63,907 nt of DNA, filler included, from Octopus bimaculoides (GCF_001194135.2; 4 parts of 3 records of this genome joined end to end with filler, not necessarily neighbours in it), one strand, 5' to 3'; positions 1,648 to 21,308 are shown, counted from the first letter of the whole stretch. The notes: generated by a model not told the origin, from the letters alone. Translations and numbers: made by a program.

Positions 1648-1787
1648 ATTTGAAGAAAAGCAACAAAAATTCAATAGGTTATAGCAGTACGTACGTATCG
1701 TACAAACTTCATTTATTTATAAATGAAGTTTGTACGAAACGTACGTACTGCTATAATCTATTGAATTTTTGTTGCTTTTCTTCAAAT
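1648..1787. repeat. Near-perfect 140-bp palindrome (foldback/MITE-like hairpin)
   Basis: Arm 1648-1716 is the reverse complement of 1719-1787 with 2 mismatches in 69 bp and a 2-nt centre. Confidence 0.9.
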
Positions 1788-3838: not shown

Positions 3839-3896
<58 letters not shown>

Positions 3897-5276
3897 CCTG
3901 TTTATATGTATATATATGGATGCATATACATATGTATATATAGTGTATATATGTGTGTATTTATATATGTATATATGATGAAAGAGAATGTTCTCTATGT
4001 GGCTCGTGTGTTCTCGTCTACGTTTGTTTGCAATGTCCTGTACCCAGATATGCACCTATACATACAGGTGGATGTCGGTATGCACATACCTGTACGTATC
4101 TATGCATATACTCATTTACTATTTGTTTTTACATGATTGAACGCAGCGTCTTCCAAAATGTAAGTAGTTTTCGTAAACTCATATCCTCCGACGCTACTCT
4201 ATCTCTTTCTCTTTCCTCCCCCCTCGTTCTTCCTCTGTACTACTACGTATCTCGCTTTACCCCTCTCGTTCTTCCTCTGTTACTACTACGTATCTCTTTT
4301 TCCCCCTCGTATTTCCTCTCTTTCTCTTTTCCTCTCGTTGCTCACCTATTCTTCTACTTCNNNNNNNNNNNNNNNNNNNNNNNNNNNNNNNNNNNNNNNN
4401 NNNNNNNNNNNNNNNNNNNNNNNNNNNNNNNNNNNNNNNNNNNNNNNNNNNNNNNNNNNNNNNNNNNNNNNNNNNNNNNNNNNNNNNNNNNNNNNNNNNN
4501 NNNNNNNNNNNNNNNNNNNNNNNNNNNNNNNNNNNNNNNNNNNNNNNNNNNNNNNNNNNNNNNNNNNNNNNNNNNNNNNNNNNNNNNNNNNNNNNNNNNN
4601 NNNNNNNNNNNNNNNNNNNNNNNNNNNNNNNNNNNNNNNNNNNNNNNNNNNNNNNNNNNNNNNNNNNNNNNNNNNNNNNNNNNNNNNNNNNNNNNNNNNN
4701 NNNNNNNNNNNNNNNNNNNNNNNNNNNNNNNNNNNNNNNNNNNNNNNNNNNNNNNNNNNNNNNNNNNNNNNNNNNNNNNNNNNNNNNNNNNNNNNNNNNN
4801 TATGATGAAAGAGAATGTTCTCTATGTGGCTCGTGTGTTCTCGTCTACGTTTGTTTGCAATGTCCTGTACCCAGATATGCACCTATACATACAGGTGGAT
4901 GTCGGTATGCACATACCTGTACGTATATATGCATATACTCATTTACTATTTGTTTTTACATGATATAAGAGTCAATTGTTTCTTTATGTCTGACTTTATC
5001 ATTTGTATAGTACTCTTTTACTCTTTTACTTTTTGTATCTCTAATGAATTATATCGATTTGGTCCCATCTCTAATGGATTATATCCATTTGGTTCCTTTG
5101 TTCCATGCAAACCAACAGAATAAAACAGATAACGCAACTGTTAGAAATCAACATTATATCGATTGTGTTATTGCGTTTCAAACGCATATTGTATTTTAGG
5201 AAACCATTTTTTAAATTCATAGTCTTTATTTCTCAGTGTTGCTTGTATGAACTTGTATCTATTTATTATCTACTCA

Positions 5277-5632
5277 TCACACTCAGTTGGTTACGATGAC
5301 GAGTGTTCCAGTTGATTCGATCAAGGGAACAGCCTGCTCGTGAAATTAACGTGCAAGTGGCTGAGCACTCCAAAGACACGTTTGCCCTTAACGTAGTTCT
5401 CTAGGAGATTCAGTGTGACACAGAGCGTGACATGGCTAGCCCTTTGAAATACAGGTACAACAGAAACAGGAAGAAAAATTGAGAGAAATTTGTGGTAAAA
5501 GAGTACATCAGGGTTTGCTACCACCCCCTGACGGAACCTCGTGGAGCTTTAGATGTTTTCACTCAATAAACATTCACAACATCTGATCTGAGAATCGAAA
5601 CCGCGATACTACGACCGCGAATCCACTGCCCT
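5277..5632 (-). mobile_element. tRNA-derived SINE, family C
   Basis: Homologous along its length to 39378-39753; B-box-like GGTTTCGATTC on the minus strand near 5590-5605. Confidence 0.8.
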
Positions 5633-5979
5633 ATATATATTAAACTGTTAAGAGTAGATATTAGACCNNNNNNNNNNNNNNNNNNNNNNNNNNNNNNNNN
5701 NNNNNNNNNNNNNNNNNNNNNNNNNNNNNNNNNNNNNNNNNNNNNNNNNNNNNNNNNNNNNNNNNNNNNNNNNNNNNNNNNNNNNNNNNNNNNNNNNNNN
5801 NNNNNNNNNNNNNNNNNNNNNNNNNNNNNNNNNNNNNNNNNNNNNNNNNNNNNNNNNNNNNNNNNNNNNNNNNNNNNNNNNNNNNNNNNNNNNNNNNNNN
5901 NNNNNNNNNNNNNNNNNNNNNNNNNNNNNNNNNNNNNNNNNNNNNNNNNNNNNNNNNNNNNNNNNNNNNNNNNNNNNNG

Positions 5980-6160
5980 TAAACACACAAGCATCTGTTG
6001 TCAAGCGATATTGGGGGGCAAACACAGACACACACACATATAAATATATATATATACATATACACGACAAACTTCTTTCAGTTTCCGTCTACCAAATCCA
6101 CTCACAAGGCTTTGGTCGACCCGAGGCTATAGTAGAAGACACTTGTCCAAAGTACCACGC
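5980..6160 (-). mobile_element. SINE family A remnant, interrupted by an RTE fragment
   Basis: Matches the internal part of 53042-53492; the head is replaced at 6160 by the RTE 3' tail. Confidence 0.75.
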
Positions 6161-6775
6161 AGGTCAGGTATGAGGGACAGGCGCCGTTGCAGTGCATCAC
6201 TGCGTTCACCTTTTTCTGTATTTTCCCGAATCGTCTCGGGTATTAGGGTATTCCTCTGAGCAGTATCCCTGTCAGTTCCTGTCAGCTGGAAATACTTGAT
6301 CGTTAGCCGTGACCATGATGCATGTGTCCAACCAGCACGAGCCATCACTCCATCTGGATCTACAGAGAAGAGAACATGACACACAGGATCGAACTCTGAA
6401 AGTCCAGCAACATGACCAAACACCCTCAGCTGACACTCCCGAATCATACAAGTAACAAGATGCACCCCAGTCTCTGAGTAGAATCGTTGACTGGATACGA
6501 AATGTGACCAATGGTAACCCATAATCCAGCGATGCGTCCTAACCCTAACCCTGGTACCAAAGGAGTGCAGGTGGTCCTTAAGGGCTGCAGAAAGTGTCCA
6601 AGTTTTGAAACTATTGAATGTGACAGAGAAGATCAGAGGCCAGCAGATCCGAACCTTTGTCCTACTGTCCAGAGATCGGCAGCGCCAAACGACTTTATCC
6701 AGTGGGTCGACAACTGCACCAGCACATCCAAGCTTCTTTTGAGACACTAGACTTGGATTGCACCTCGCACTTCTT
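6161..6775 (-). mobile_element. 5'-truncated RTE-clade non-LTR retrotransposon (RT C-terminus and 3' end)
   Basis: ORF 6127-6837 contains RTKVRI..KTWTL..SFGTR..MGYHWSHFVS..RECQLRVFGHVA..DP, typical of RTE C-termini; ends in ACCTG-type repeats. Confidence 0.8.
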
Positions 6776-6970
6776 ATATATGCATGTGTGTGTGTATGTA
6801 TATATGTATGTACGTACGTACGCATGCATGTATGCATGTATGTATATGTGTGTGTGTGTATGTATATATGTATGTACGTACGTACGTATGCATGTATGTA
6901 TGTATGTATGTATGTATGTATGTATGTATGTATGTATGTGTATGTGTATGTATGTATGTATGATTTATTT

Positions 6971-7018
6971 CACTGAATATTTCTAGCACTGAATATTTCT
7001 AGCACTGAATATTTCTAG
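6971..7018. repeat. 16-bp tandem repeat x3 (CACTGAATATTTCTAG)
   Basis: Three exact copies read directly from the sequence. Confidence 0.95.
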
Positions 7019-7795
7019 TTTAAATCATTACCGGTGAAAACAAAACGAACAATTTTACATGTATGTCAGTATTTCAATTTATTTTTCACTGTTAAGCATA
7101 ACCCTCCAATAATGACCGAATTTCTAATAAATTTCGTTTCTCGTGTAAGAGATTTTGCATTTTCGTTTAACCTCTACCGACGTTATAAGCAAGTAAGTTG
7201 CTGAGACGCAAAATTTCGTCCAAAGAGCAAAAAGAAAGATTTTAATTTTGATTTGGCTTTGTAAACTTTGATCAAATTAGTTTAGAATTACCTGCTTAAA
7301 TAGCTTTTAAGAGACCAGAGCTGAAACTCAAATATTAACCTAAAATTTTCGGTGCTTTCTTACGTTGGAATAGACGAAAATTGATTCTTGTAAACTGTTT
7401 ACCATATTCTTCAGAAAAGTTTTCGATGTTACTTTCACCATTATTTTTTAGCTTGAATAACAAATCGTCTCACTTTTTAAGAGAAATCAATCAAATGCAC
7501 TTATTTTATCTCATATATTATTTAGATGATGGGTAACAAGCGTTAAGATTCTGTTTAACTGCTTCTGGTATATAATTAAGACTCGTTATGTTTTACGATC
7601 AAATGCTGTTCAGGTTTTCTTTATGATTCATTCTTTGAAGATCGATAAAATAATACCCGAGTGCTTCATTAGTACTCGGGTAAATTTAATAAATATCCCA
7701 ATGTGTGAATGGATTTCTAAGAGAAGACTAATTTAAAACGAAAAACGTTAGCAATAAATATAAATTAACAAACAAAATATCTGAATTAAATTGAT

Positions 7796-7801
7796 TTTAT
7801 T
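7796..7801 (-). promoter_or_regulatory. Putative polyadenylation signal of the PAN-domain gene
   Basis: AATAAA on the minus strand, about 110 nt downstream of the stop at 7913-7915. Confidence 0.4.
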
Positions 7802-7912
7802 AGTAAAGAAATACACATTTTATCTGATATCATTATTATTAGCAAACGTGATCCTTTGAAGGATCACATTTCATTGAGAAGTAAATAATTTTCAGGTGAA
7901 TTCCATTAAAGT

Positions 7913-8103
7913 TCAGATCAGTTTCTTTAGTAGGCACTTAGTGTTAGTATATGAAAAGGCGGTACATGTAGAAGATATCATACATAACCGTGAACAATCC
8001 AGAACCGAGTGAGCATCCATTTGGGCATCGGTTACAAGGTTGTGATATGGATTTTGTTTGAAGGAAAAAGTTGAATAAGCTGTCTGGCCATTAATTTCTT
8101 TTT
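7913..8103 (-). CDS. PAN/apple-domain gene, terminal coding exon (third PAN domain)
   Basis: Long polypyrimidine tract plus CAG acceptor at 8105-8104 (phase 1). Encodes KEINGQ..SVLDCSRLCMISSTCTAFSYTNTKCLL with C-x3-C-x5-C-x8-C PAN spacing; TGA at 7913-7915. Confidence 0.75.
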
Positions 8104-9089
8104 CTGCAATAGAAGTAAAAGTAATAGAAAGAGGAAACACAAGAAATATAAGAACATAAATGAAATTATTGCTCTTCATTGACAAGGTACAAGGGAAACG
8201 AATAGATGTGGTCTATTGATTCGGTCTGTTGATAATGTTCCGTTTGCAATCTTTAGGTTAGTGTGAGCCGGGAGTGAGTTCCTGAGTGTTGCATAATCTA
8301 GAAAGGCAAGATTGGGAATAATAATTGATGTGGGATCTGGTTGGTGAAATAGTATGTATGACAGGAGAGGGAGAAGGGGTATGTAGCTGATGATCTCGGA
8401 GGTAGAGAGATTCTCGTATTACCAGCGAGACGTATTTGGGCATTTCTGAGCAATTTAGTAATGAAGCGTGCCCAGATTTTTAATGACAACCAGGATTAAT
8501 ATTAATCCATCTGCCAAATTTTAAATGAATTTTTAGATCATTTGCAAGGCTATTAATTATTAATTCACTGCTAACCATTTTTTTAATAAGAATTAAGACC
8601 AAATAGAAATAATAATGTGATGAGAAAGAAAGAGATATTTATTAATTTCTTCATTTTTTTGCGGCAAGAACTAGATCAATGAATTAAAGATGAGGAACAA
8701 AAAATAGAAACAAAGAATACAATAAATAAACAATTAAAAAACGGTCTTACTGTCAACGAAATAATAAGAGTCGAAAATTCTTATACCACATCCTACAGAG
8801 TTAATCTTCTCAAATGTAAGGGACTGTTTGAAATCATTCCAAAGTTCTGAAATGGAATAAAAATAAAATAGTTTCCTATTTCTCGTGTAGATGTGATATC
8901 TTTCATGATTTCTTTAATATTAATCAAGAAATCCTAATCTCTTTAATACAATCGACTTTCCTATTTATATAAGATGATTTTATATAAGAAATCATTTCTT
9001 CTTTAATATACGTTGAGTTTTATTTACTATTAGTTATTTCTAGTATCGGTACAAGGCCTCAGTTATGAAGGGAGGGGACAGACTTTTAG

Positions 9090-10050
9090 AAAGCTTCTTG
9101 GATGTTACTGGTAGCTTTGGAATCGCAATCAAATCTTTGTTTATGTGTAATTAGATCACATTGGATTAGGAAAGCCAATATTTTGTGCAGAACACTTCCG
9201 TTGGTTTGGGTACATCTCAAGCAGCCCCAACTCATAGTGTTTCTATGTAACCTGTAGAGGCTATATCGAGCCGGCAATGTCTACTGGTAGCATAGCCAGG
9301 CCAATGATTTCTGGAAATTATCGATTAGCTCCGGTCCCCAAATGGAAGAGATCAGCTACTTAACGTTTGTCGATGCCCAGAGCCTCCCCAACGACACCGT
9401 CGCTCTTTCCTACAACAAACCATCTGTAGAACATCAAACAGGAACTTCTGTATTGGTTGAGAGGGTTGAGAGCTTCTGTCTACAATCTAGATGTGTCAGC
9501 AGTGGAAAAATGAGTCTGATAAACGGAGACCACACTTGTTGAGCACCAAGGAAACCCTGGAGATGTCGCAGCTTCAGTGTATAGCCAGCTCTCCACTCAG
9601 TGGGTACTGACAACCAATAAAGCGCTTGAACGGTACAAGGTGTTCCTTTCAAAGAAAGCAGACTTCAATCTGTTACAGCGAGAAACGGTATATTGCACGA
9701 TGTTCACGCGATAATATGATGGAAATGTTGTAAGCATTCGGCACCTCTGCTCCACCTTTCAGGGATAACTTCCTCTGGGCTGATTCCTGAGTAAGACTGG
9801 TCACCCTGCTCGACCCAGTTCTTCTCTACTTGGAGACCTGGGCCAAACTAGGCCTCAAGCAATTTATTCAGTGTACAATGACGCTGCTGGACTGATCGAC
9901 GTGCATCTCTAGGTACAGAGCTGTAGAACGATTTTTGTTGCTGTCATTGCCTCGTAGTCCCTTAAAGCAATGCCGATTACCTCGATGCGCCTGATGTCAG
10001 ACACGACGACAGTGCGTTTAATAGAATTATGGTCCGAAAATAATCACGAG
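9090..10050 (-). mobile_element. Degenerate Tx1/L1-like retrotransposon fragment
   Basis: Minus strand reads IDNFQKSLAWLCYQ*TLPARYSLYR..CLRCTQ..SVLH, homologous to 17550-18529 and 59323-59620. Confidence 0.7.
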
Positions 10051-10281
10051 ATTCCTGTTGTTCAGGTCACTTCTCAGCGATGCTACCACTGCTCAACTCA
10101 CAGCATTCTTCTGTTGTGCTACCAGTCCTGGTAAATATCTGCCAAGAGGTCTCCAAACAAGTGTGGCATCCAAAAATAAAGTTCATAGGGTAGAACATCG
10201 AAAACAAAAGATTTTACTTCCAATATTCATTCACTCAACTTTCAACTCCCTTTTTTTGCAGGTGTTGCTTTTCGCAACAAT

Positions 10282-10325
<44 letters not shown>

Positions 10326-10524
10326 ATACATGTTAGGTCGCTTTCGAGTGACACTGGACGTTCTTGCTTATACGTACACACACACACACATACATATCTA
10401 TCTATATATATATATATCTACACATAAGGAAAATAACACAGACATACAAATACAAGAATATTTACACTTAGTCGTACACATTTAAATGTACATATATATC
10501 CACACACATACTCATACGCACACA

Positions 10525-10560
<36 letters not shown>

Positions 10561-10562
10561 TT

Positions 10563-10900
10563 TTTTACTTGTTTCAGTCATTTGACTGCGGCCATGCTGG
10601 GGAACCGCCTTTAGTCGAGCAAATCGACCCCAGGACTAATTCTTTGTAAGCCTAGTACTTATTCTATCGGTAACTTTTGCCGAACCGCTAAGTTACGGGG
10701 ATGTTAACACACCAGAATCGGTTGTCAAGCGATATTGGGGGACAAACACAAACACACATACACATATATATACATATACATATATACGACGGTTTCCGTC
10801 TACCAAATCCATAAGACTTTGGTCGACCCGAGGCTATAGTAGAAGACACTTGCCCAAGGTACCACGCAGTGGGACTGAACCCGGAACCATGTGGTTGGTA
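10563..10900 (-). mobile_element. tRNA-derived SINE, family A
   Basis: Reverse complement of 53042-53492, including the GGTTC(A)GTCCC B-box region and an internal microsatellite; head cut at about 10900. Confidence 0.85.
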
Positions 10901-11142
10901 AAAATTTAAAATAAGATAAAATCGTTATAAGAATTTATCAAGTAGTCAGCGTGAAAAACCTCAAAAAGGGAAAAATTATAATTATTCCCTTTAAATATAT
11001 CTATTTATATTAAGGGCATTTATACACATAAATGCCTCACGCTATGAGGGACTTTTAAAGTCAAAACTACCATAATAAATACAGTGTACCGAACGCGAGG
11101 GAATGCAACTCTTGAAGCGAGCTCCTTAAAAACAGATTCAGC

Positions 11143-11201
11143 CGCATATCATATGATTTCATAATTAGCGCACAAAATGCACTTTATAATCGTCAGTGCA
11201 G
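11143..11201 (-). ncRNA. Hammerhead-like motif upstream of the Penelope-like endonuclease
   Basis: Stem I CTGCA/TGCGG, core CTGACGA, stem II containing hairpin AGTGCAT/GTGCGCT, GAAA, palindromic stem III ATCATATGAT, triplet AUA. Stem II junction is imperfect. Confidence 0.45.
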
Positions 11202-11579
11202 TCATAATCAAGGCACATAAAAATGAACAAAAATCAACATACCAGAACGAACACCAAATGTATCCAACATAGCACATTAGAATTGTTCACTCGTATATGT
11301 CTATGTAAGAGGCGGGCTTTTCGAATTGCATCTCGGTACACGTGTATATTCANNNNNNNNNNCCCTCCAGAAAATAAATATATCATAAAAACTTATTCAA
11401 AAAATCAATAAATCAATAAAAATCAATAAAATGCAAAAGAATAACTAGTAAATGGTATAAAAGGACTACGCACATAAATATAATAATAGTCGACTAAAAA
11501 TAAGATTAAAAATAAGATTAAAAATAAGATAATAATAAATTTGATAATATGAAAAAAGAAATGTAATAATATAAATAAT

Positions 11580-12284
11580 AAGAACAAAATTTGACTAATC
11601 ATTCCTTATGGAGCTCAAGTTAAGACAAAAATTATTAGAGATCTTAAATATAATTGAGCTATTCATTAGAGATAATAAAAAATATTATAACATTTTTCTA
11701 GTGATAATTTTGGAGTTGGTTACTCTACTACTAATAATGTTGGTAATATTATTTCTTCTTCTAATAAATTTAAGCTGAATAAGTTTTACAAAAACAAATC
11801 AAGTAATTTTTCCAATAATAATAATATATATCAGAACATAATTAATTGTATATGTAGAGATAAAAATAAATGTAAATTTTATAACTTTAATTTGGAGGAT
11901 GTAGTATATAAATGTGCAGTGACTTTGCTTGATGATAATAGTATGAATGGTCATGATTTAAATACTATTTACATAGGGTCAACTTCTAACAAAATTAAAT
12001 TACGTTTGGCTCAACATTCTTTTAAGAATAGAAATTTAATTAATTCTACTGGCCTTAATAAATATATATGGGAACTAAAATCTAAAAATATTATGTACAA
12101 TTTAAATTGGGAGATAGTTTGTAAAGCTAAATCTTATCGAATAGGTAGTGCTTCTTGTTTATTATGTACTAATGAATTTAAGGAGATATTATTATCTGAT
12201 AATAAAAAATTGTCTAATTTCCTAGATGAACGAAAAATTAAATGCAGACATAATCTAAATTACTTATATAATAAGTTTAGATGA
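11580..12284 (+). mobile_element. Penelope-like element C-terminus with GIY-YIG endonuclease
   Basis: VVYKC..IYIGST..RLAQHSFKN..STGLNKYIWELK..W.IVCKAKSY..CLLC.NE..KCRH, preceded by CICRDKNKC and degenerate VGYSTTNNVGNII, as in Penelope/Poseidon-type elements. Confidence 0.85.
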
Positions 12285-12474
12285 GTTGTGTATTTATATG
12301 AACCCTCGTTTATGTTACTAATTGTTCTAGTTATAATTTGTAGTAGTAGAATAATTTATTGAACTATTTAATAAGTGGTTCTTCTTTAAATTATATACAT
12401 ATATTTCATATTGGGAAATTTGATTTAGTATAGTCAAATTGAATTTTTCCCTGTAAGTTTTGGAATTTATTCCC

Positions 12475-12517
<43 letters not shown>

Positions 12518-12605
12518 GCATGTATGTCTATACATGCATATATCTATATGTATATGTACATACATGCATCCATACATCCATACATACACACACACACACA
12601 CATAT

Positions 12606-12665
<60 letters not shown>

Positions 12666-13279
12666 ATGTGTGTGTGTGTGTGTGTGTGTATATGGCTACA
12701 GGACGTCACAAACCGTAAACAACATGAAATACGAAAACAAAAGAGTTGAATACGCAAACAACGAGGGAAAGAAATGGAAAACAGGACAAGTAACATAAAG
12801 AACGACCCTTCATTAGTTGTCGGCTGTCCATCTACTCCTCATTTTGAGCATTGAACGACAATATGAGTATTCGAAGGCAGTTGCCCACGCAAACCAAATT
12901 AAAATTTAGGATTTGCGGAGGATCAAGGCTGGTAACAAAAACAGGACAGTAGAGACGTACAAGGAAACCGAACGAAAAGAACATGAAAGGTCGTTAGACT
13001 AGACGATGGTAAAATAGCGAACACTGGAGAAATATTTTCTTTGACAAGAAAATAGATAGAAGAGAGAGACAGATAGGATACGTGCAGTCTCTATGACAGC
13101 CCTGAAAGAAAAGAAAGATGATCACGTGAGAAAAAAAGATGGACGAGGGTCACATGTGAGCAACGAGAGAGAGAGAGAGTAAAGGATAAAGAGGGAGAGA
13201 GAGACATAGAAAGAAAACGGTGAAGGGGACAAAAAGGAATTAGAGGAAGGATAAGAGAGAAAACGACAGGAGAGTGAGT

Positions 13280-13351
<72 letters not shown>

Positions 13352-13451
13352 ACAGCATAGGGTAGAGTCGCATCAAAAATACTAAGATAAGCTTACTTGG
13401 AAATGGATAAGTGGCTTTCAATCAAATAATAATATAAATAATATCTGTCTG

Positions 13452-13516
<65 letters not shown>

Positions 13517-13611
13517 ATATCTATCTATCTATCTATGCATATGTGGGTATAGGACATCACAAAACATATATATATGTGTGTGTGTGTATATATATATATG
13601 CATATATATGA

Positions 13612-13835
13612 AATTGACATGCAAGTGGCTAAGTACTCCACAGGCACGTGTACCCTTAACGTAGTTGTCATGGAGATTCAGCGTGACACAGAGTGTGACA
13701 CAGGCTGAGTCTTTGAAATACAGGTACTACTCACTTTTGCCAGCTGAGTGGACTGACGCAACGTTGTGTCTTGCTCAAAGACACAACGCGTCGCCAGGAA
13801 CTGAACACACAACCTTGCGCTCCTGTGCTAAATAT
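13612..13835 (-). mobile_element. SINE family C-related partial copy
   Basis: Shares the GTGCAAGTGGCT..GTACCCTTAACGTAG..GTGACACAGAG block with 39378-39753. Confidence 0.65.
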
Positions 13836-13920
13836 GCGAACAACTAAGACATGCGCCTTCACACTGTCTAATCAGACTGTGACTGAAATCCCCAAAATTA
13901 TAAAACAAATCTGCACTTAC

Positions 13921-14151
13921 TTCTGTCTATATCAGCGTAAAGTTCATGTTCCCAGAAACCCAAATTGCTGGCAGTATGATTCGCAACTGTCATTCGGCAT
14001 TCTTTTGCGTCAAAGCCGTAGTCGATCGACTGACACTTTGGTTCCGCTTCACATCTTTTGAAACACTGTGTATAATTCTGAAGATACGTGGTACCCAAAT
14101 CATTGTTGTCAGGAAGATAACTGTTGTAAACGAAATCTACAGGACATTTTC
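13921..14151 (-). CDS. PAN/apple-domain gene, internal exon (second PAN domain)
   Basis: TTTCAG acceptor (14153-14152), GTAAGT donor (13920), 231 nt, phase 1-1. KCPVDF..QNYTQCFKRCEAEPKCQSIDYGFDAKECRM has PAN cysteine spacing. Confidence 0.85.
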
Positions 14152-14515
14152 CTGAAATAATAAAACAGATAAATGAACGTTTTGATTCGGTTTTCATAAT
14201 TGTGGTGGCCTGCTTTTATGGTGAAGTGATTTATTGTGTAGATTAATGAGAAATAATCCTTTCTGCTGAAGATACAAAACTTGAAAATTTGTGGGAGGGG
14301 CTAAGAGGATGATATCGACTCAGTGCTCAACTGGTACTTACTTTATCGACCCTAAAAGGATAAAAGGCAAAATCGCCCTCGGCGGAATTTGAACTCAAAA
14401 TGTAAAGATGTATGAAATGGTGCCAACCATTTTTTGCACGTTGTGCTAACGACTATGCCAGCTCGCAGCCTTTTATCATAAGAATAATAATTTGATAGAA
14501 GTTTTGGGTAAAGAT

Positions 14516-14553
<38 letters not shown>

Positions 14554-15400
14554 CTCAACAAAGTATCTCAACAGGCATGATAGAGCTGCACAATATATTC
14601 ACTGGGTAATATGCAAAAACCTGGACTTGCCCCATGATAAAAACTGTTGGGAACACAAACGACCCCCAGTACTTGAAAATGATCACATCGCACTCCTCTG
14701 GAACTTCACCATTCAAACTGACAGAAAGATAGATGCAAATAGGCCAGACATCATACTGAAAGACTTCAGACAAAAATCATGCCTCCTCATTGATATGACT
14801 GTCCCAATCGATATAAACGTATCTGTCAGACCTACCAAAAACTGAGCAAATATAAAGATCTTGAAATANNNNNNNNNNNNNNNNNNNNNNNNNNNNNNNN
14901 NNNNNNNNNNNNNNNNNNNNNNNNNNNNNNNNNNNNNNNNNNNNNNNNNNNNNNNNNNNNNNNNNNNNNNNNNNNNNNNNNNNNNNNNNNNNNNNNNNNN
15001 NNNNNNNNNNNNNNNNNNNNNNNNNNNNNNNNNNNNNNNNNNNNNNNNNNNNNNNNNNNNNNNNNNNNNNNNNNNNNNNNNNNNNNNNNNNNNNNNNNNN
15101 NNNNNNNNNNNNNNNNNNNNNNNNNNNNNNNNNNNNNNNNNNNNNNNNNNNNNNNNNNNNNNNNNNNNNNNNNNNNNNNNNNNNNNNNNAAAATACTGTC
15201 TATGTGATCTCAAATTTTAAAACAAACACAGAATTTTCTTATGGTTTCTTAAACATTCTCTAGAACAACACTATGTACAAATCCAAATATATGGTACCCT
15301 AGGCATAACACCTACAGGAACTTCTAACTTGTTGTCTCTTGAGGTCTCTGGGTGAGACTTGGACCCAACTTGTATACATGCAAAGCAAAAGTCAACCATA
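14554..15400 (+). mobile_element. 5'-truncated R4/Dong-like (RLE) retrotransposon, copy 1
   Basis: YLNRHD..IHW..C..WEH..LWNFTIQTDRKIDANRPDII..CLLID..KLSKYKDL (restriction-like endonuclease region); begins at (TAA)n and ends at (AAT)3. Confidence 0.85.
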
Positions 15401-15410
15401 AAATAATAAT

Positions 15411-15745
15411 ACTAAAGGAGATATGACAGGTTAGTTTGGGAAGTTAAGGAAAAGTCGAGAGATATGACAGATTTGCTTGGGAAGTTAAGCAGTTCTGGTC
15501 GAGGAAAAGGTAGCAGTAGTACCAATAATTGTCGGAGCCCTGGGAACAGTGAGCAAAATTCTCGAGAAGTACGTAGAACAAATAGGGACTGCAATAAGGG
15601 TGGATCACTTGCAGAAAACAGCACTGCTTCAAACCGCTCGAATACTCCGGAAGGTGCTCGAAAGATAAGATGTGTTACCTTAGTTCACTAGTAGTGAACA
15701 GCTGACACTATAGTACATCACCAGCGTTAGAAGCTGTGTAAAGGC
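15411..15745 (+). mobile_element. 5'-truncated R4/Dong-like retrotransposon, copy 2
   Basis: VVPIIVGALGTVSK..LQKTALLQTARILRKVLER* (stop 15666-15668); distinct 3' UTR; followed by (TAA)n at 15746-15817. Confidence 0.85.
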
Positions 15746-15818
<73 letters not shown>

Positions 15819-16519
15819 GCAACAGAAAAAAGATGGTATAAACACACGCCAGAAAAGGTCACAGAAAACGAGAAAGCAACCATACTCTGGGATATGCCAA
15901 TACACACAGATAGAGAAATTNNNNNNNNNNNNNNNNNNNNNNNNNNNNNNNNNNNNNNNNNNNNNNNNNNNNNNNNNNNNNNNNNNNNNNNNNNNNNNNN
16001 NNNNNNNNNNNNNNNNNNNNNNNNNNNNNNNNNNNNNNNNNNNNNNNNNNNNNNNNNNNNNNNNNNNNNNNNNNNNNNNNNNNNNNNNNNNNNNNNNNNN
16101 NNNNNNNNNNNNNNNNNNNNNNNNNNNNNNNNNNNNNNNNNNNNNNNNNNNNNNNNNNNNNNNNNNNNCAGCAGATGACAACGTTTCTCTAAAAGAAATG
16201 GAAAAACTTTCAAAATACAAAGACCTGGAAATAGAGATAACTCGAATGTGGAATCTAAAAACAGAAACAATTCCTATCATAGTAGGTGCCTTAGGTATAA
16301 TAAAAAAATATTCAGACAAATACATAACAAAAACACCAGGACTTACAAATATATATAACATACAGAAAATTGCACTACTGGGTACTGCACACATTCTACG
16401 CAAAACACTTTCAATACAGTAAACATAAGAGCACCACAGCAAACCACAGCACATACCCAAGGCGCACAGAGCTGCGCTCGGTAGTGAAGTGAAAGTACGT
16501 TATAAAAATAAAACTACTG
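15819..16519 (+). mobile_element. 5'-truncated R4/Dong-like retrotransposon, copy 3
   Basis: WYKHTPEKVTENEKATILWDMPIHTDREI..KLSKYKDLEIEITRMW..PIIVGALG..QKIALLGTAHILRK; flanked by (TAA)n on both sides. Confidence 0.9.
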
Positions 16520-16649
16520 AATAATAATAATAATAGCAACAACAACAACAACAACGACAACAACAATAACAACAACAACAACTACAACAACAATAATTAT
16601 AACTAATGAACTAATAATAACCATGAACTACTAACAAAACTTTACAACG

Positions 16650-17220
16650 ATGTTTTGCAACATCCTAGTATGATCCCGTCTTGGCTAGTTAATGGTTTAA
16701 CATTCCTACTTCAAAAAAAAAAAAAAAAAATTAAGAAACAAATGAACCAAAAAATTAACAACAATGTATAAAACACTAACATCTGTCCTGACTGAATATA
16801 CCTATAGTTTTTAATAGGAAGTAGCATATTCCTTAATGATCAAAAATGATGTAGACGTGGATCTTATGTTTGTAAAGATCAGCTTCTCATCAATAAGATG
16901 ACCTTGGAAGATTATCACAAATGGCACAAAAACTTGTCGATAGTCTGGGTAGATTATAAGAAAAGCTTTTGATAGTCTATACCACATAGCTGGATTAAGA
17001 AATGCCTGGAAATGTATAAAATAGCTCCTACTCTGCGAAACTTTTTGTCTGTATGAGATCATGGAGAACCATACTGACTTTGAACGGTGACAATGAATCT
17101 CTAAATATTGGAGATGTAAGAATTTCATGATGGCATTTTCCAGGGTGACTCACTATCACCACTCCTCTTCTGTCTAGCCTTAATGCCTCTCTCAAAATTA
17201 CAAATGACATCGCTGAGGAA
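16650..17220 (+). mobile_element. Degenerate RT fragment of the R4/Dong type
   Basis: CKDQLLINKM..LSIVWVDYKK(A)FDS..HSWIKKCLEMYKI..GIFQGDSLSPLLFCLAL, with frameshifts. Confidence 0.8.
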
Positions 17221-17549
17221 GGTCAGATCAAATAGTGGAATTTTCTATGCGGTTGTCCATGTGAACAGCGCTGGAAATTGGTGCCGTCCCTGCTCTGCAT
17301 AGGCCTGTGTAACCTCTGAGTATATTAATATAACAATGACAAATAGTAAATAATAAAAACAATAATATCAGTGATATCAGTGATAATGATGATGATAATA
17401 ATAATAATGAAAGGAAGCGGGCGGAGTCTGCCCATGTCTTGATTAATGATACATCTAGTGATGGTATCACAATAAAAACACTGGTAATTGCGCAACCTGA
17501 TAATCGCTACCTCATACGAGTGACAATGAAAAAACAAAATATTGTGAAT

Positions 17550-18529
17550 GTGACATCTCCAGCGTTTCCTTGACGGTGAGCAGGGGTTGTTGTCATTTGT
17601 CAGAAAGGATTTTCCATAGCTTGTCTATTTGACTCAGCTGCACTTTTTGATCAAGCATAGACTGAACAAAGCGCCTGGTACCTAAAGTGTCATCAGATGC
17701 TCACAATATTCTGTCAGTCGGGCGATGCGGTCGGCGGAAGTTCCACACTGGCTTCTTGTAGAGAGTTAGACGCGGCGAGTTTGACAGCGTTCACGGAGAG
17801 ACACTAGGTGTCGACTGTTTGTTCCAGATGATTCTTATGCCGGAAACCATAGATAACTTCCAGAAATGCCTGGCATGGCAATGCTACCGAGTGGTATTGC
17901 CGGTTCGGGATAAACTCTTCAGGCATGGAAGCCGTTTATCGAGCTTGTTCGAGACATGGGCAGAGCGACGAAACTGCTCTGCACGCTCTCGTGCAGTATC
18001 CGAGCATTGCTGACTTGTGCATTTATGTCGAACATCTGCTGTCGCGTGTATGACATATACGGCTATCGAATGAGTCCATCGTGAAGATAACCACGTCGCC
18101 TTCCTTTGACCGGGAAGGACAGGCAGTGTTTATTTGTCAGGTTTCTTAGTGAAAGGCACCTGTTTGGCTGAGCCCTCATCAAGTTTTTCAAGTTTCCTTT
18201 GAAAGTAATGTAAGGGTAGAGAAGCAAGTGCTGCCTACAGGCAAATCTGTTAAAAGGTTGGTGAAAATAGCACGGTCTGAATGGACGAGCCTATTCTAAG
18301 CATGCGCCTTTAGATCAAATTTCGATAAAGGGGAGAGGGTACCTGCCCTGAAAGTTAAGGATATCGTGTTTTTGTGGGATTTTCACGAGCAGCCCTTATA
18401 AATCTAATTCTTTTGAGGATTTTAATTGTTAGAATTTACACATTTCAATCTCACTCTGTTTGCATTGTATTGTCCTATACCGTCTCCAATATTCCATAGG
18501 AACCCTCTGTGGTTAATAAAGAAAATATC
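17550..18529 (+). mobile_element. 5'-truncated Tx1/L1-like retrotransposon with 3' UTR
   Basis: IDNFQKCLAWQCYRVVLPVRDKLFRHG, degenerate zinc-knuckle region, and 3' end CCCTCTGTGGTTAATAAAGAAAATATC. Confidence 0.75.
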
Positions 18530-18537
18530 ATTGTTAT

Positions 18538-18715
18538 TAAGGTGATGAGCTGCTGAAATCTTTAGCACGCTGGACAAAATACATTGCGGCATTTCGAGTG
18601 TCTTTACGTTGTAAGTTCAAATTTCGTCGTAGTCGAAATTTGCCTTTCATCCATTCTGGGTCGATGTAATCGATTATTCCCTCCCACAAAATTCTAAGTT
18701 TTGTTCCTATAATAC
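18538..18715 (+). mobile_element. tRNA-derived SINE, family B (diverged)
   Basis: GAGCTG..TTAGCAC..GTTCAAAT..TTGCCTTTCATCC..GGGTCGATGTAATCG matches 33598-33826. Confidence 0.7.
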
Positions 18716-18766
18716 AAAAGGATTATTATCATCATCTGTCAGCTTGTCTGCCTGCCGGCTTGTTTG

Positions 18767-18823
<57 letters not shown>

Positions 18824-19386
18824 ATATCTATCTGTCTGTCTCCTCTAGGTTTCTAGCTCCCAATGATGACTTATAAAACCATTCCCCTCTACCTAAACTC
18901 TTAGTAATAGTGGGTATATAAGCAGTGACTTAGTGAAGTCTTAAAGTTGCCACTGATGACGTCTCAAAAAAGAATTGAATTTAGTCTCTTTGATCGCTCT
19001 TCCTGAATCGTTAGAAAGCCGGACAAAATGATTTGCGTCGATAAACTATATTCAAGTCAAGAAGTGGGCTTCATGTAATCAGGCATTGTCATTATAGTAG
19101 ACATGATTAAAGAAAAAACACTACTACTACTATTAGTCTCCTTGGCAATCTTGTATCTCAATCCCAAATTCTGTGCTGCAAAACACATCACTCAAAACTT
19201 TATTAGAACCATCACTCTCTGGAACGAAAACTCTACAAACAATCTTTATCTACAGACACCATTTTACATTGACCAGAGAAATCGCAGAGACTTTTGAAAT
19301 GCCGACAGTATTGTCTCTCTTTCGACTAAAACATAGAATTCAAGTCAAGGAATGAAATAAATACCAGAAGATTCATATTTGTTTAC

Positions 19387-19644
19387 CGTCTCTAAACTTC
19401 GTCGGCACAGATCTTCTCAACTGATAAAAATGGGTATTAGTTACTTCTATTAGTCGCTTCTCTGTTGAGTCATCTTCGTATAAAATACAGCTTGGACTTT
19501 TCGCTCTGTTCACAAAGGATTTACACACCGAAGTTTCCAAACACTTCTTCGAACAGTCGAAGGCATCCACGTCAAGTGTCGTCAATATTTTACCTTCTTT
19601 GAGAGTACAGTGTTGTACTTTCAAAAAATACTTCAGATATTCAA
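19387..19644 (-). CDS. PAN/apple-domain gene, internal exon (first PAN domain)
   Basis: TTACAG acceptor (19646-19645), GTAAAC donor (19386), 258 nt, phase 1-1. DAFDCSKKCLETSVCKSFVNRAKSPSCILY..HFYQL. Confidence 0.85.
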
Positions 19645-21057
19645 CTGTAACAAAGTCAGACAAATTAAACAACCAAAATAAGATGACGAAAATAAAAGAT
19701 TGTGAAAATAGATAATAATAAAGAAATAGAATATTAAAAGTTTGACGATCAATATTGATATTTTTAACATAAAAGAAGTGATAAAGTTGTTACTACCATA
19801 GTGTAGGTACAAAGCATCTTGGGATATATTATATGTTTAATGAAAATTACTGCGAATGAGTGTTTAAAGTTGTTTATTTATTTAAATGATTCATATGTTA
19901 TGTTTTATAATGTTTAACGGTTGTCTCTTGTAAAGTTTGCCCTATTGTCAGCTCTTAAGTCAAATTTAACAAAATGCTTACAAACGAAAAACTAAATTTT
20001 AATCAATGGAAATAATGTTAAGAAGTGAATTTGCCACCATGCGGCTGTTTTGTTATGAATTCAGAATTTCAAATTTTCTTTCCAACTAATTTATTTTGAG
20101 AAGGAAAATATGTTGAACTTATAAATGAAGTGTTTGTATACCAATTTTCATATTTTGCATAAATATAGGTCTATGGATTGATATAAATCTACTTACGTCC
20201 ATTTCCAAATTTCAATGAGATGTAGAAGAGAACTGCAACGAAAATTTATTTTGTAAAATATTTCATATTTCATATTCACGTTTAACGTTAATTTACAAAA
20301 ATATAAAGATGAAAGGAATAAGAAAGAGAAGTGCTACAAGCATAATTCGATAACAAATACGACGATGACCACCACTACATCACCATAAAATTATCCATTG
20401 AAATAATAAGGAAAAGCGATAAATTGGAGGGAGATAGAAAGATAGAGACGAGAAGAGAGAGGGAGAGAAGTGAGAGTGAGACAAAGGGAGAGAGAGGAAC
20501 AAAGCAGAAAATATGAAGATGAAGAAAGATGAAGAAAGAAAAAGAAATGTTTTCAAACGAGATAAGAAGCATCAGTATTTCTTGGAAGAGAACATTCTAG
20601 ACATTTCAGAAAAGATTGTGAAAGTATTACGTAAATAAGGAGCAGGACAAAGAGTGAATGTAGTGAACCGAAAGGAGGTTTTAATTAATCGAAATTACAC
20701 ACGTATTGAAGAGAAAAAAGTCACATGAATGAATAATAACCATAGTCAAGAGATGGAAGAGAGAGAATCGGAAATTGAAATTGATTAAAAATGATATAGA
20801 AGTAAGCAGTGGGGAACGAATCTAATTTTTAGTAGGTCTGGGGCTAACTCCAGTCATGTTTTGGTCTTCTCAGATATCCGTTGGGAAATAAAGCCTAATA
20901 CGTATTTAACCAGAACATAGAATATAAATTTGGTGTGAAAATTACTCACTGAATAGGCATTGATTTAAAATAAGACGATGGCAAGTTTTTAGGACTTCCT
21001 CCTGTATGCAGAACACAGACTAAATAACCAAATATATAATGAAAGGTGACGACATAC

Positions 21058-21181
21058 TTTCTGGTGAGCCATTCATTGCCAAGGCAAATAATGCTTCCAG
21101 ACAGCAGTATATGTCGATTGGATCATATATTGCAATGTAATTTGGAGAGAAGAACGTATAAGAATTGACAAAAATATGCAT
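21058..21181 (-). CDS. Candidate first coding exon of the PAN-domain gene
   Basis: ATG at 21181; MHIF..IYCCLEALFALAMNGSPE then A|GTATGT phase-1 donor, compatible with exon 19644. The hydrophobic stretch is only loosely signal-peptide-like. Confidence 0.3.
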
Positions 21182-21308
21182 GAAACACGATACATAATAA
21201 CCACCTGACTAAAATCAACAGGGAAATGACAATTATGCATCTTAGTCGTTGCAAATTCAGCTAGGTCCACTCTCCTCTTGGTTTTCGTATATATATATAT
21301 ATATATAT

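What the first reader, a model, noticed from the sequence alone, without database searches (positions are those of the whole stretch)
7913..21181. Small protein built from three tandem PAN/apple domains, one per phase-1 exon
Seen: exons 19644-19387, 14151-13921 and 8103-7913 splice in frame (..KFRD-G-KCPVDF..DIDR-K-KEING..). Each encodes a highly diverged PAN domain and no catalytic domain is visible. Known: PAN domains bind proteins or carbohydrates (plasminogen, factor XI, Toxoplasma MIC4), and phase 1-1 symmetry is the signature of exon shuffling. Inference: a lineage-specific, probably secreted adhesion, lectin or recognition protein of about 270-280 aa. Its 5' end lies near a scaffold join and may be incomplete.
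Basis: partly seen in the sequence, partly recalled or inferred. Interest (0 to 1): 0.7.

Follow-up and report, generated by a model that had tools for sequence, protein, structure and literature searches.

The report
Octopus secreted three-PAN-domain protein gene
This is an apparently intact, so far unannotated copy of an octopus-specific family of small secreted proteins made of three PAN (apple-like) binding domains: a real gene, but an ordinary new member of a known domain class whose ligand is unknown.

Summary
Each has AG/GT borders and phase 1, and each alone passes Pfam's PAN_1 threshold.

Homologues from Octopus sinensis, O. bimaculoides, O. vulgaris and Argonauta hians (276-282 aa when full length) correct the gene model:
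One is 20232-20197, the end of the signal peptide. The other is 8846-8751, 96 nt, phase 1-1, carrying an invariant Cys and the first strand of the third PAN domain.
- The ATG exon lies beyond the piece edge, at about 21630 by collinearity.
- All three N gaps are intronic.

The locus is collinear through its introns with a partial O. sinensis gene (LOC118761500). It is mosaic relative to O. bimaculoides paralogues: synonymous divergence is 0.025 in the last exon and 0.57 in the PAN2 exon. PAN2 is the variable domain. dN/dS against the orthologue is about 1, yet all framework cysteines and the reading frame are kept (P about 0.0015 under neutral simulation).

Best reading: a secreted, non-catalytic, multivalent binding protein from a tandemly duplicated octopod family. 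The ligand is unknown. Novelty is low to moderate.

The parts
20233..21308 (-). 3' part of intron 1. The ATG exon (31 coding nt in homologues) is expected about 300-400 nt beyond the piece edge.
Evidence: In L001, L002 and L003, exon 1 (ATG...AT[TA]T|GTATGT) lies 1.4-2 kb upstream of exon 2. Window 21077 aligns to L002 10558, which places exon 1 near 21630. No exon-1-like sequence is present in the window.
20197..20232 (-). Exon 2, 36 nt, phase 1-1: end of the signal peptide (..F)LFYISLKFGNG(L..).
   Evidence: The acceptor is ttttcgttgcag and the donor is GTAAGT. The exon is nearly identical, with the same borders, in three annotated homologous genes. tblastn matches to homologue signal peptides are 71-79% identical.
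19387..19644 (-). Exon 3, 258 nt, phase 1-1: PAN domain 1.
   Evidence: PAN_1 scores 31.6 bits, E = 1.5e-7, covering profile positions 3-73 of 76. AG/GTAAA borders. It is 71-79% identical to Octopus homologues.
14152..19386 (-). Intron 3, with assembly gaps at 14869-15189 and 15921-16168 and repeat-element fragments.
   Evidence: Homologous proteins are contiguous across this junction (KFRDGKCP). The flanks are collinear with L001, L002 and L003. Window 16197-16533 is 99.1% identical to a stretch inside the homologous intron of L001, in the opposite orientation relative to the gene.
13921..14151 (-). Exon 4, 231 nt, phase 1-1: PAN domain 2, the variable domain. It starts with the invariant G-K/R-C-P cysteine.
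   Evidence: PAN_1 scores 30.5 bits, E = 3.4e-7. It is 74% identical to O. sinensis LOC118761500 but only 38-54% identical to the other paralogues.
8847..13920 (-). Intron 4, with the 10-N gap at 11353-11362 and a segment of about 0.8 kb absent from O. sinensis.
   Evidence: Anchors 13459-12603 and 11352-11054 match L002 21876-22690 and 23128-23423 in order. The ORF at 11892-12284 gives a weak GIY-YIG hit below threshold.
8751..8846 (-). It is a linker plus the invariant Cys and first strand of PAN domain 3.
   Evidence: The borders are ccatttcag and GTAAG. It is present in P0002, P0003, P0006, P0007, P0009, P0011, P0014, in Argonauta P0017 and in the distant paralogues P0018, P0025 and P0045. 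dN/dS is 0.27-0.47. In the AF2 model of P0003 its end forms the first strand of the third domain. hhalign aligns it to the N-terminus of PAN2, weakly (P = 0.014).
7913..8103 (-). Exon 6: the rest of PAN domain 3 and the stop codon (TGA at 7915-7913). The protein ends ...KCLLKKLI.
   Evidence: PAN_1 scores 24.7 bits, E = 2.2e-5. The same C-terminus and stop position occur in O. bimaculoides P0003 and P0014, and similar ones in P0002, P0007, P0009, P0017 and P0025. It is 97-98% nt identical to two O. bimaculoides paralogues.
7245..7912 (-). Conserved 3' flank, probably the 3' UTR (inference).
   Evidence: Window 8676-7245 aligns to L001 20118-21583 at 81%, and to L002 and L003 at 81-91%. AATAAA/ATTAAA motifs lie at 7801, 7690 and 7246. 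No transcript evidence is available.

Best explanation
The window carries exons 2-6 of a six-exon, minus-strand gene. Every intron is phase 1. Exon 1, with the ATG, lies just beyond the piece edge.

The gene encodes a protein of about 280 aa: a cleavable signal peptide, then three PAN modules and nothing else. It belongs to an octopod-restricted, tandemly duplicated family annotated only as 'uncharacterized protein / Apple domain-containing protein' (for example O. bimaculoides LOC106868906 and O. sinensis LOC118766713). Its closest collinear counterpart is O. sinensis LOC118761500.

Shown here: the exon structure, PAN identity, family membership, the conserved 14-cysteine framework (4+1+4+1+4), and preservation of the open frame.

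Inferred:
- The mature protein of about 30 kDa is secreted and disulfide-rich.
- It acts as a non-catalytic, multivalent extracellular binder of a protein or glycan ligand.
- The conserved PAN1 and PAN3 act as scaffold or common-partner modules.
- The fast-diverging PAN2 sets ligand specificity.
- Paralogues exchange their 5' and 3' exons by gene conversion.

My estimates: about 0.85 that it is a functional or recently functional member of this family; about 0.7 that it acts by extracellular ligand binding; no better than even between glycan and protein ligands.
For: - **Exons and phases:**
- **PAN_1 hits** above the gathering score for each domain.
- **Homologues** are only Octopus and Argonauta small proteins with the same layout.
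- **Identical exon 1/2 architecture** in three annotated loci.
- **Collinearity through introns** with O. sinensis L002 at 79-89%.
- **Tandem paralogues** on O. bimaculoides CM046617.1 at 29.99-30.06 Mb.
- **Signal peptide** of homologues has an n-region with K/R, a 12-residue h-region of mean hydropathy 1.7-2.2, and G-N-G before the cleavage site.
- **N-x-T sequons** are present in PAN2.
- **Fold:** the AF2 model of paralogue P0003 (68% identical, pLDDT 62) gives three strand-strand-helix-strand units. Its Foldseek hits are all PAN/apple structures: kallikrein and FXI at 1e-6, SML-2, TgMIC4, HGF N domain, and plasminogen at rmsd 2.1 A over 76 columns.
- **PDB sequence hits:** SML-2 at 8e-4, then TgMIC4 and plasminogen.
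- **Constraint on the scaffold:** 73 substitutions in 483 nt against the orthologue, yet no stop and all 10 Cys kept. Simulated neutral probability is 0.0015.
- **Variable PAN2:** mean pairwise identity is 0.47, against 0.73 for PAN1 and 0.85-0.94 for PAN3.
- **Mosaic history:** dS is 0.025 (PAN3), 0.16 (PAN1) and 0.57 (PAN2) against the same paralogous locus.
Against: - Exon 1 and the promoter are not in the piece, so completeness is unproven.
- No protein identical to this gene is in the 5.8-billion-protein collection. It is either unannotated or not called as a gene.
- dN/dS against the O. sinensis counterpart is 0.85 (PAN1) and 1.06 (PAN2). This would also fit relaxed constraint.
- The window protein has 15 cysteines, so one (Cys13, 'QHC') has no evident partner.
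- No transcript, tissue or ligand data exist. Literature searches found nothing on this family.
- The structure model is of a paralogue and only of moderate confidence.
- No signal-peptide predictor was available.
Confidence: 0.8

Rival explanations
1. The copy is a young pseudogene or silent duplicate. The family evolves by birth and death, and this member, although still open in exons 2-6, is no longer expressed or has lost exon 1.
For: It is unannotated in the protein collection. dN/dS is about 0.85-1.06 against its O. sinensis counterpart, and exon nucleotide identity (85%) equals intron identity (85-86%). It has an odd cysteine count. Exon 1 is unseen. Neighbouring family members show truncated or chimeric models (P0001, P0008, P0012, P0013).
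Against: All five exons are open with canonical splice sites. All 14 framework Cys are present. Neutral simulation gives P = 0.0015 for keeping the frame and 10 Cys over the divergence from the orthologue. Exons 5 and 6 show dN/dS of 0.27-0.47 against several paralogues. A very recent inactivation cannot be excluded.
Confidence: 0.12
2. One reading: a three-exon coding body in which 14151-13921 splices directly to 8103-7913 (exon 8846-8751 skipped), with a start exon near 21181.
For: Skipping is frame-neutral because the 96-nt exon is phase 1-1. Two predicted homologue models (P0004, P0010) skip it.
Against: The exon has intact AG/GTAAG borders. It is conserved to Argonauta and to distant paralogues and carries an invariant Cys. 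It is under purifying selection. It is included in most models that span the junction. The 21181 ORF aligns to intron 1 of three loci with indels and stops, and has no signal-peptide character. Homologues instead use the 36-nt exon at 20232-20197.
Confidence: 0.07
3. The exons are part of a much longer multidomain gene, such as the giant multi-PAN octopus proteins of 1730-2643 aa or the PAN-WSC and SVEP1-like fusions.
For: Such giant or fused PAN proteins exist in Octopus and are the next-best matches (P0015 at 3e-62, P0016 at 9e-51, P0067, P0086).
Against: A signal-peptide exon lies immediately upstream of PAN1. A stop conserved across species and paralogues lies 7 residues after the last Cys. 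tblastn finds no further PAN exon in window 1-7900. Identity to the small family (60-75%) is far higher than to the giants.
Confidence: 0.02

Closest known systems
Octopus 'uncharacterized / Apple domain-containing' tri-PAN proteins (O. bimaculoides LOC106868906, LOC128249715, LOC106882685; O. sinensis LOC118766713, LOC118761179, LOC118761500; Argonauta hians Ahia01_000849900)
   Same: Same six-exon, all-phase-1 structure. Same layout of signal peptide, PAN1, PAN2, linker with Cys, and PAN3. Same stop position. 60-75% overall identity, and 74% in PAN2 to LOC118761500, with intron collinearity.
   Different: It is not identical to any annotated protein. It has one extra unpaired Cys. It is mosaic: the last exon is 97-98% identical to O. 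bimaculoides paralogues, while PAN2 is only 68% nt identical. None of these proteins has a described function.
Apicomplexan micronemal apple-domain lectins (Sarcocystis muris SML-2, PDB 2yil; Toxoplasma gondii MIC4, PDB 4a5v)
   Same: Secreted proteins made only of tandem PAN/apple modules. They are the best sequence matches among solved structures (E = 8e-4 and 0.025) and are also fold matches. They work as multivalent galactose-binding adhesins (from the PDB entry titles and my own knowledge).
   Different: 12-18% identity. They have different cysteine patterns and domain numbers and come from an unrelated lineage. Sugar-binding residues were not compared, so lectin activity here is only a hypothesis.
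Factor XI / plasma prekallikrein apple domains
   Same: Top Foldseek matches (E about 1e-6). Tandem PAN-type modules used for protein-protein binding (kininogen and others).
   Different: Those have four apple domains fused to a serine protease, each with a C1-C6 disulfide closing the domain. The octopus domains have no C6 and no protease. In my recollection each vertebrate apple domain is split over two exons, whereas PAN1 and PAN2 here are single exons.
[quoted passage not shown]
   Same: A four-cysteine core (C-x3-C-x5-C-x9-11-C) without the apple C1-C6 bond. Best single-domain superpositions are rmsd 2.1-3.6 A over 74-91 columns.
   Different: Those are single N-terminal modules of large kringle/protease proteins that bind heparin or their own protein.
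Leech antiplatelet protein (LAPP) and nematode PAN-only secreted proteins (recalled from memory, following Tordai, Banyai & Patthy 1999, a reference listed in PMC7588048)
   Same: Small invertebrate secreted proteins consisting essentially of PAN modules that bind extracellular matrix partners.
   Different: Not compared here. They did not appear among the matches I inspected.

Membership tests
PAN module superfamily (Pfam PAN_1, PF00024) | Profile match above the curated gathering score. | tested here: met
   Each of the three exon translations alone scores 31.6, 30.5 and 24.7 bits against a cut-off of 21.4. The whole protein scores 62.9-64.6 bits.
PAN module superfamily (Pfam PAN_1, PF00024) | Four-cysteine core linking the helix to the central strands (C-x3-C-x5-C-x9-11-C). 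| tested here: met
   Mature-protein Cys lie at 31/35/41/53, 116/120/126/138 and 232/236/242/252. The same spacing occurs in all family members. Disulfide pairing itself was not tested.
PAN module superfamily (Pfam PAN_1, PF00024) | Strand-strand-helix-strand-strand fold. | tested here: inconclusive
   This was tested only on paralogue P0003 (68% identical), because the spliced window protein was not accepted by the tool. That model has pLDDT 62, three such units, and only PAN/apple proteins among the 15 Foldseek hits at E <= 0.001, one of them a fungal copper oxidase.
Apple domain in the strict sense (factor XI / prekallikrein type) | A third disulfide, C1-C6, joining the N- and C-termini of each domain. 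| tested here: not met
   No domain has a cysteine after the fifth position. PAN3 ends 7 residues after its last Cys. The C1 of PAN1 is absent in P0003 and P0004.
Octopod tri-PAN secreted protein family (LOC106868906-like) | Layout of signal peptide, PAN1, G-K/R-C-P plus PAN2, LWNDF..GC linker, and PAN3 with a short tail. | tested here: met
   The alignment with 7-12 members shows all elements present in the window model. The only exception is the first ~10 signal-peptide residues, which are encoded off-piece.
Octopod tri-PAN secreted protein family (LOC106868906-like) | Six exons, all introns phase 1, with the same exon borders. | tested here: met
   Exons 2-6 have the same borders as in L001, L002 and L003. 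Exon 1 is not testable in this piece.
Octopod tri-PAN secreted protein family (LOC106868906-like) | Expression as an mRNA or protein. | not testable with these tools
   No transcript data are available. The family models are computational predictions.
PAN/apple lectins (SML-2 / MIC4 type) | Galactose-binding pocket residues and measurable sugar binding. | not tested
   Only overall sequence and fold similarity was seen. Pocket residues were not compared.
Class 1-1 mobile extracellular module (exon-shuffling signature) | Module-encoding exons flanked by phase-1 introns on both sides. | tested here: met
   Exons 2-5 are 36, 258, 231 and 96 nt, all multiples of 3, and each starts and ends in phase 1.

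The most novel reading that the evidence does not exclude
The octopod tri-PAN genes form a diversified extracellular recognition repertoire. They sit in a tandem array in which gene conversion keeps PAN1 and PAN3 uniform while the central PAN2 exon diverges quickly on an invariant cysteine scaffold. The logic would resemble other invertebrate variable binding families such as snail FREPs, with roles in immunity, mucus or egg-coat biology, or chemotactile recognition. This window would be an unannotated member of that repertoire.
Probability: 0.2. Interest if true: 0.55.

Novelty: new member of a known kind. Interest (0 to 1): 0.3.

Why it matters
On its own this adds one correctly structured, previously unannotated gene to an uncharacterised octopus family. 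It also corrects a plausible but incomplete gene model.

The wider value is modest but real. Octopods appear to have expanded PAN-module proteins: small tri-PAN proteins, giants of 1.7-2.6 thousand residues, and fusions with WSC and SVEP1-like regions. None of these has a known function.

The small family shows two features typical of recognition molecules: a variable central domain on a fixed disulfide scaffold, and exchange of flanking exons between paralogues. If expression data tied the family to haemocytes, skin or sucker epithelium, salivary gland or reproductive tissue, it would become a tractable candidate for cephalopod-specific recognition biology.

Tried and rejected
1. **Translating the exons in frame 1** gave stops. 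The correct frame is offset by 2, as phase 1 requires.
2. **Possible nonsense mutation.** I first read the sequence upstream of 20232 as a one-exon signal peptide with an in-frame TAA (MKYFTK*IFVAV...), suggesting a nonsense mutation. I rejected this when three homologous loci showed that the same 'ttgcag' is a used acceptor and the ATG lies in a separate upstream exon.
3. **Search for an exon-1-like sequence** in the window gave only chance short matches.
Paralogues served as proxies.
5. **First AF2 run** (P0002, 8-sequence alignment) was unusable at pLDDT 38.8. The second (P0003, 13 sequences) was moderate.
6. **Origin of exon 5.** I considered that it might be a remnant of the C-terminal strand of a lost PAN domain. 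hhalign instead aligns it, weakly, to the N-terminal Cys plus strand of PAN2 (P = 0.014). Neither reading is established.
7. **Literature searches** for octopus or cephalopod apple/PAN proteins and for six LOC identifiers found nothing relevant.
8. **Pfam on eight other window ORFs** gave only one sub-threshold GIY-YIG hit. Rfam and tRNA scans found nothing.
9. **Positive selection on PAN2** is not claimed. A dN/dS of 1.06 from one pair over 76 codons is not distinguishable from 1.

Full report
**1. The observation**

Each is preceded by a pyrimidine tract and AG. The first two are followed by GTAAA and GTAAG, and the third ends in TGA.

All start two bases into a codon, so the flanking introns are phase 1. 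The junction codons read KFRD-G-KCPVDF and DIDR-K-KEING, as stated. My first translations showed stops only because frame 1 was used.

Each exon translation on its own passes Pfam PAN_1. Scores are 31.6, 30.5 and 24.7 bits against a cut-off of 21.4, with E = 1.5e-7, 3.4e-7 and 2.2e-5. The joined protein scores 64.6 bits. No catalytic domain is found.

**2. What the gene really looks like**

A search of 5.8 billion proteins returned only Octopus sinensis, O. bimaculoides and O. vulgaris proteins. They are named 'uncharacterized protein LOC...' or 'Apple domain-containing protein', and are 50-75% identical to the query.

The full-length members (P0002, 282 aa; P0003, 276 aa; P0007, 280 aa) have four elements:
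- a signal peptide, MLQ..FLFYISLTFGNG;
- PAN1, then PAN2;
- PAN3, ending ..KCLLKKLI.

tblastn of these proteins against the window found both missing pieces.

- **Exon 5, 8846-8751.** It has borders ccatttcag / GTAAG, is 96 nt long and is phase 1-1. It encodes K-LWNDFKQSLTFEKINSVGCGIRIFDSYYFVD.
- **Exon 2, 20232-20197.** It has borders ttcgttgcag / GTAAGT, is 36 nt long and is phase 1-1. It encodes ..LFYISLKFGNG.

I first suspected a nonsense codon upstream of exon 2. The genomic loci of three annotated homologues ruled this out: L001 is O. bimaculoides LOC106868906, L002 is O. sinensis LOC118761500, and L003 is O. bimaculoides LOC128249715. In all three the same acceptor is used, and the ATG sits in a separate 31-nt coding exon 1.4-2 kb further upstream.

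In the window that exon would fall near position 21630, beyond the edge at 21308. No exon-1-like sequence is present in the piece.

It aligns to intron 1 of the three loci with indels and stops, and is not supported.

The revised model covers exons 2-6 and gives 269 residues. With about 10 residues from exon 1, the protein is about 280 aa. All introns are phase 1.

**3. The assembly gaps**

- Gap 11353-11362 lies in intron 4.
- Gaps 14869-15189 and 15921-16168 lie in intron 3, the nearest 718 nt from an exon.

No reading frame crosses a gap, because the coding parts are joined by splicing.

For the intron-4 gap, both sides are anchored in order to the O. sinensis locus. Window 13459-12603 matches L002 21876-22690, and window 11352-11054 matches L002 23128-23423.

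For the intron-3 gaps, the bracketing anchors (window 18982-18849 and 14553-13590) are collinear with L002. The exon order, orientation and approximate spacing match L001, L002 and L003.

Homologous proteins are contiguous across both introns, so no hidden exon is expected. Base-level continuity across the intron-3 gaps cannot be demonstrated. The sequence there is repeat-derived.

**4. Relatives and probable origin**

The window aligns with L002 (O. sinensis) through exons and introns at 79-89%, including long stretches of intron 4. PAN2 is 74% identical to LOC118761500 but only 38-54% identical to any other member. That gene is therefore the likely orthologue. It is itself cut by a contig end.

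Against O. bimaculoides paralogues the picture is mosaic:

| Exon | nt identity | dS |
|---|---|---|
| Last exon (PAN3) | 97-98% | 0.025 |
| PAN1 exon | 89% | 0.12-0.16 |
| PAN2 exon | 68% | 0.57 |

These values are for the same paralogous locus, L003. A more than 20-fold spread of synonymous divergence within one gene pair points to gene conversion or exon exchange between paralogues, not selection alone.

Three lines of evidence make O. bimaculoides or a very close relative the probable source:
- the near-identity of the last exon to O. bimaculoides paralogues;
- a 337-nt repeat fragment 99.1% identical to L001;
- the similar gap-ridden assembly style of L003.

No identical protein exists in the collection, so the gene appears unannotated.

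At least three paralogues lie within 80 kb on O. bimaculoides CM046617.1.

An exhaustive HMM search of 1.84 billion cluster representatives found 239 proteins at E <= 0.001. I looked up 20 of them:
- The named ones were octopod, with one exception.
- They include an Argonauta hians 235-aa protein with the same layout (E = 1.7e-43) and more distant O. bimaculoides tri-PAN paralogues (LOC106868212, LOC106868215, LOC106882156).
- They also include giant multi-PAN proteins (2643 and 1730 aa) and PAN fusions with WSC or SVEP1-like regions.
- The exception was an annelid multi-PAN protein at 1e-20.

'Lineage-specific' is therefore supported at the level of octopods, within the limits of that sampling.

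**5. Domain and structure**

All members share a 14-cysteine framework: four per PAN core, with spacing C-x3-C-x5-C-x9-11-C. One further invariant Cys lies in G-K/R-C-P at the start of PAN2, and one in ..V-G-C.. of exon 5.

No domain has a cysteine after the fifth position. The factor XI-type 'apple' C1-C6 bond is therefore absent, and these are PAN modules in the broad sense. The two singleton cysteines may pair with each other (inference).

The window protein and its O. sinensis counterpart have an additional Cys ('QHC', mature position 13). In P0002 and P0007 that Cys is accompanied by a second extra Cys. In the window it has no evident partner, giving 15 Cys in total. A free thiol or a covalent dimer is possible.

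The spliced window protein was not accepted for structure prediction. AF2 on P0002 with 8 sequences failed (pLDDT 38.8).

AF2 on P0003 with 13 sequences gave pLDDT 62 and three units:
- PAN1 and PAN2 each show two strands, a helix and three strands.
- PAN3 shows three strands, a helix and two strands. Its first strand (SYFILDKKEIN) spans the exon 5/6 junction.

Foldseek against the PDB returned PAN/apple proteins as its significant hits (15 at E <= 0.001):
- plasma kallikrein and factor XI (E about 1e-6);
- Sarcocystis SML-2 and Toxoplasma MIC4;
- further down the list, at E 0.003-0.03: the HGF N domain, plasminogen (rmsd 2.1 A over 76 columns) and AMA1.

A profile search of PDB sequences gave SML-2 (8e-4), MIC4 and plasminogen.

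hhalign weakly aligns the end of exon 5 (GCGIRIFDSYYFVD) with the start of PAN2 (KCPVDFVYNSYLPD), P = 0.014.

Together these results indicate that the third domain is encoded by exon 5 plus exon 6. 'One domain per exon' is therefore true only for PAN1 and PAN2.

**6. Selection**

Against the O. sinensis counterpart, Nei-Gojobori dN/dS is 0.85 for PAN1 and 1.06 for PAN2. Exon nucleotide identity (85%) equals intron identity.

Even so, the 483 aligned coding bases carry 73 substitutions without a stop, and all 10 cysteines are retained. In 20,000 neutral simulations this happened with frequency 0.0015.

Exons 5 and 6 show dN/dS of 0.27-0.47 against several paralogues.

Among paralogues the mean identity is about 0.73 for PAN1 and 0.47 for PAN2. 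It is 0.85-0.94 for PAN3 in well-modelled members.

The pattern is a fixed scaffold with freely changing surfaces, most strongly in PAN2. It fits either relaxed constraint or diversifying selection. The data here cannot separate the two.

**7. How it most likely works**

- *Shown:* the gene structure, PAN identity, family membership and scaffold conservation.
- *Inferred from the homologues' N-termini:* a cleavable signal peptide. It has a basic n-region, a 12-residue hydrophobic core with mean hydropathy 1.7-2.2, and small residues G-N-G before the junction with LEYLKY. N-x-T sequons in PAN2 point the same way. The mature protein of about 30 kDa would be secreted.
- *Inferred from established knowledge of PAN modules* (protein-protein or protein-carbohydrate binding; PMC7588048, citing Tordai et al. 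1999): a non-catalytic, multivalent extracellular binder. I take PAN2 as the specificity-determining module, and PAN1 and PAN3 as conserved scaffold or common-partner modules.

My probabilities are about 0.85 for a functional or recently functional family member and about 0.7 for extracellular ligand binding. I have no preference between glycan and protein ligands.

**8. Rivals**

- **Young pseudogene (0.12).** It fits dN/dS near 1, the lack of annotation and the unseen exon 1. The intact frame, splice sites and cysteines argue against it.
Skipping exon 5 is frame-neutral and occurs in two predicted models. However, the exon is conserved to Argonauta, is constrained and carries an invariant Cys, and the 21181 ORF is not conserved.
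- **Part of a long multidomain gene (0.02).** The signal-peptide exon, the conserved stop, and the absence of further PAN exons downstream contradict it.

**9. Comparison and novelty**

The closest relatives are the uncharacterised octopod tri-PAN proteins, and membership is met for every testable feature.

The closest characterised analogues are the PAN-only micronemal lectins SML-2 and MIC4. They share architecture, secretion and multivalent binding, but have only 12-18% identity and come from another lineage.

Factor XI and prekallikrein apple domains are the best fold matches. Their defining C1-C6 bond and the protease are absent here.

I found no paper on this family.

This is a new member of a known kind, with low to moderate interest (0.3). 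The most novel reading not excluded is a diversified octopod recognition repertoire with a hypervariable central PAN domain (probability about 0.2).

Noticed in passing
window 7913-8103 vs 13921-14151 vs 19387-19644, compared with L003: Synonymous divergence from the same O. bimaculoides paralogous locus differs more than 20-fold between exons: 0.025 (PAN3), 0.16 (PAN1) and 0.57 (PAN2). The 3' region including intron 5 is 91% identical, against 78-80% elsewhere. This suggests gene conversion or exon exchange within the tandem array.
   Followed up: partly
window 19609-19611 (Cys codon in 'KVQHCTLK', mature residue 13): The predicted protein has 15 cysteines. The family framework has 14, and members carrying this extra Cys usually have a second extra one (P0002, P0007). 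The window protein does not, so a free thiol or an intermolecular disulfide is possible.
   Followed up: partly
window 16197-16533 (also ORFs 14492-14845 and 16198-16422, + strand): Repeat-element fragments lie in intron 3, antisense to the gene and interrupted by the two N gaps. One 337-nt piece is 99.1% identical to a stretch inside the homologous intron of LOC106868906 (L001 16740-17076), in the opposite orientation relative to the gene. This implies a recently active element and independent insertions. There was no Pfam hit.
   Followed up: partly
window 11892-12284 (+): A 130-aa ORF with a weak, sub-threshold GIY-YIG nuclease match (E = 0.0018, 18.9 bits against a cut-off of 22.6). It lies in a roughly 0.8-kb stretch of intron 4 that has no counterpart in the O. 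sinensis locus, so it is probably a mobile-element insertion.
   Followed up: partly
window 3974-4137 and 4801-4964: A 164-nt direct duplicate at 99.4% identity. The second copy starts at the first base after the N gap 4361-4800, which looks like an assembly artefact at a gap edge.
   Followed up: yes
window 7371-7448 (-): Downstream of the stop, a stretch translates to KNNGESNIENFSEEYGKQFTRINFRL. This is 73% identical to the aberrant C-terminus of the O. sinensis model LOC118766702 (P0004), which leaves exon 6 early and loses the last two Cys of PAN3. It is most likely conserved 3' UTR mis-called as coding in that model, or less likely a minor isoform.
   Followed up: no
window 2590-2994 (+): A 134-aa ORF that looks by eye like a degraded mariner-type transposase (..LVTGSEKWISYENVKRHRQW..). 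Pfam gave no hit at E <= 0.01, so this is unconfirmed.
   Followed up: partly
window 6775-6962, 12477-12651, 13270-13351, 13442-13536, 15746-15818, 18767-18841: Many long microsatellites: (TATG)47, (AT)88, (GAGA)20, (TATC)24, (AAT)24 and (TCTA)19. They generate long spurious ORFs rich in Y/I/C/H/T.
   Followed up: no
L003 33906-34013 and 35936-36121; L003 6321-2422 (minus strand); L002 785-2712: The annotated homologues appear mis-modelled. LOC128249715 (355 aa) runs into unrelated sequence, although proper exons 5 and 6 lie downstream. LOC106882685 (119 aa) lacks its upstream exons. A further paralogue 3' end, with a frameshift in exon 6, sits upstream of LOC118761500 in O. sinensis.
   Followed up: partly
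P0015 (O. sinensis LOC118764742, 2643 aa), P0016 (O. bimaculoides LOC106869390, 1730 aa), P0067, P0086: Octopus genomes also encode giant proteins with 7-13 PAN units, and PAN fusions with WSC or SVEP1-like regions. Their PAN units are the next-closest relatives of the tri-PAN family, which points to a broad octopod expansion of this module.
   Followed up: partly
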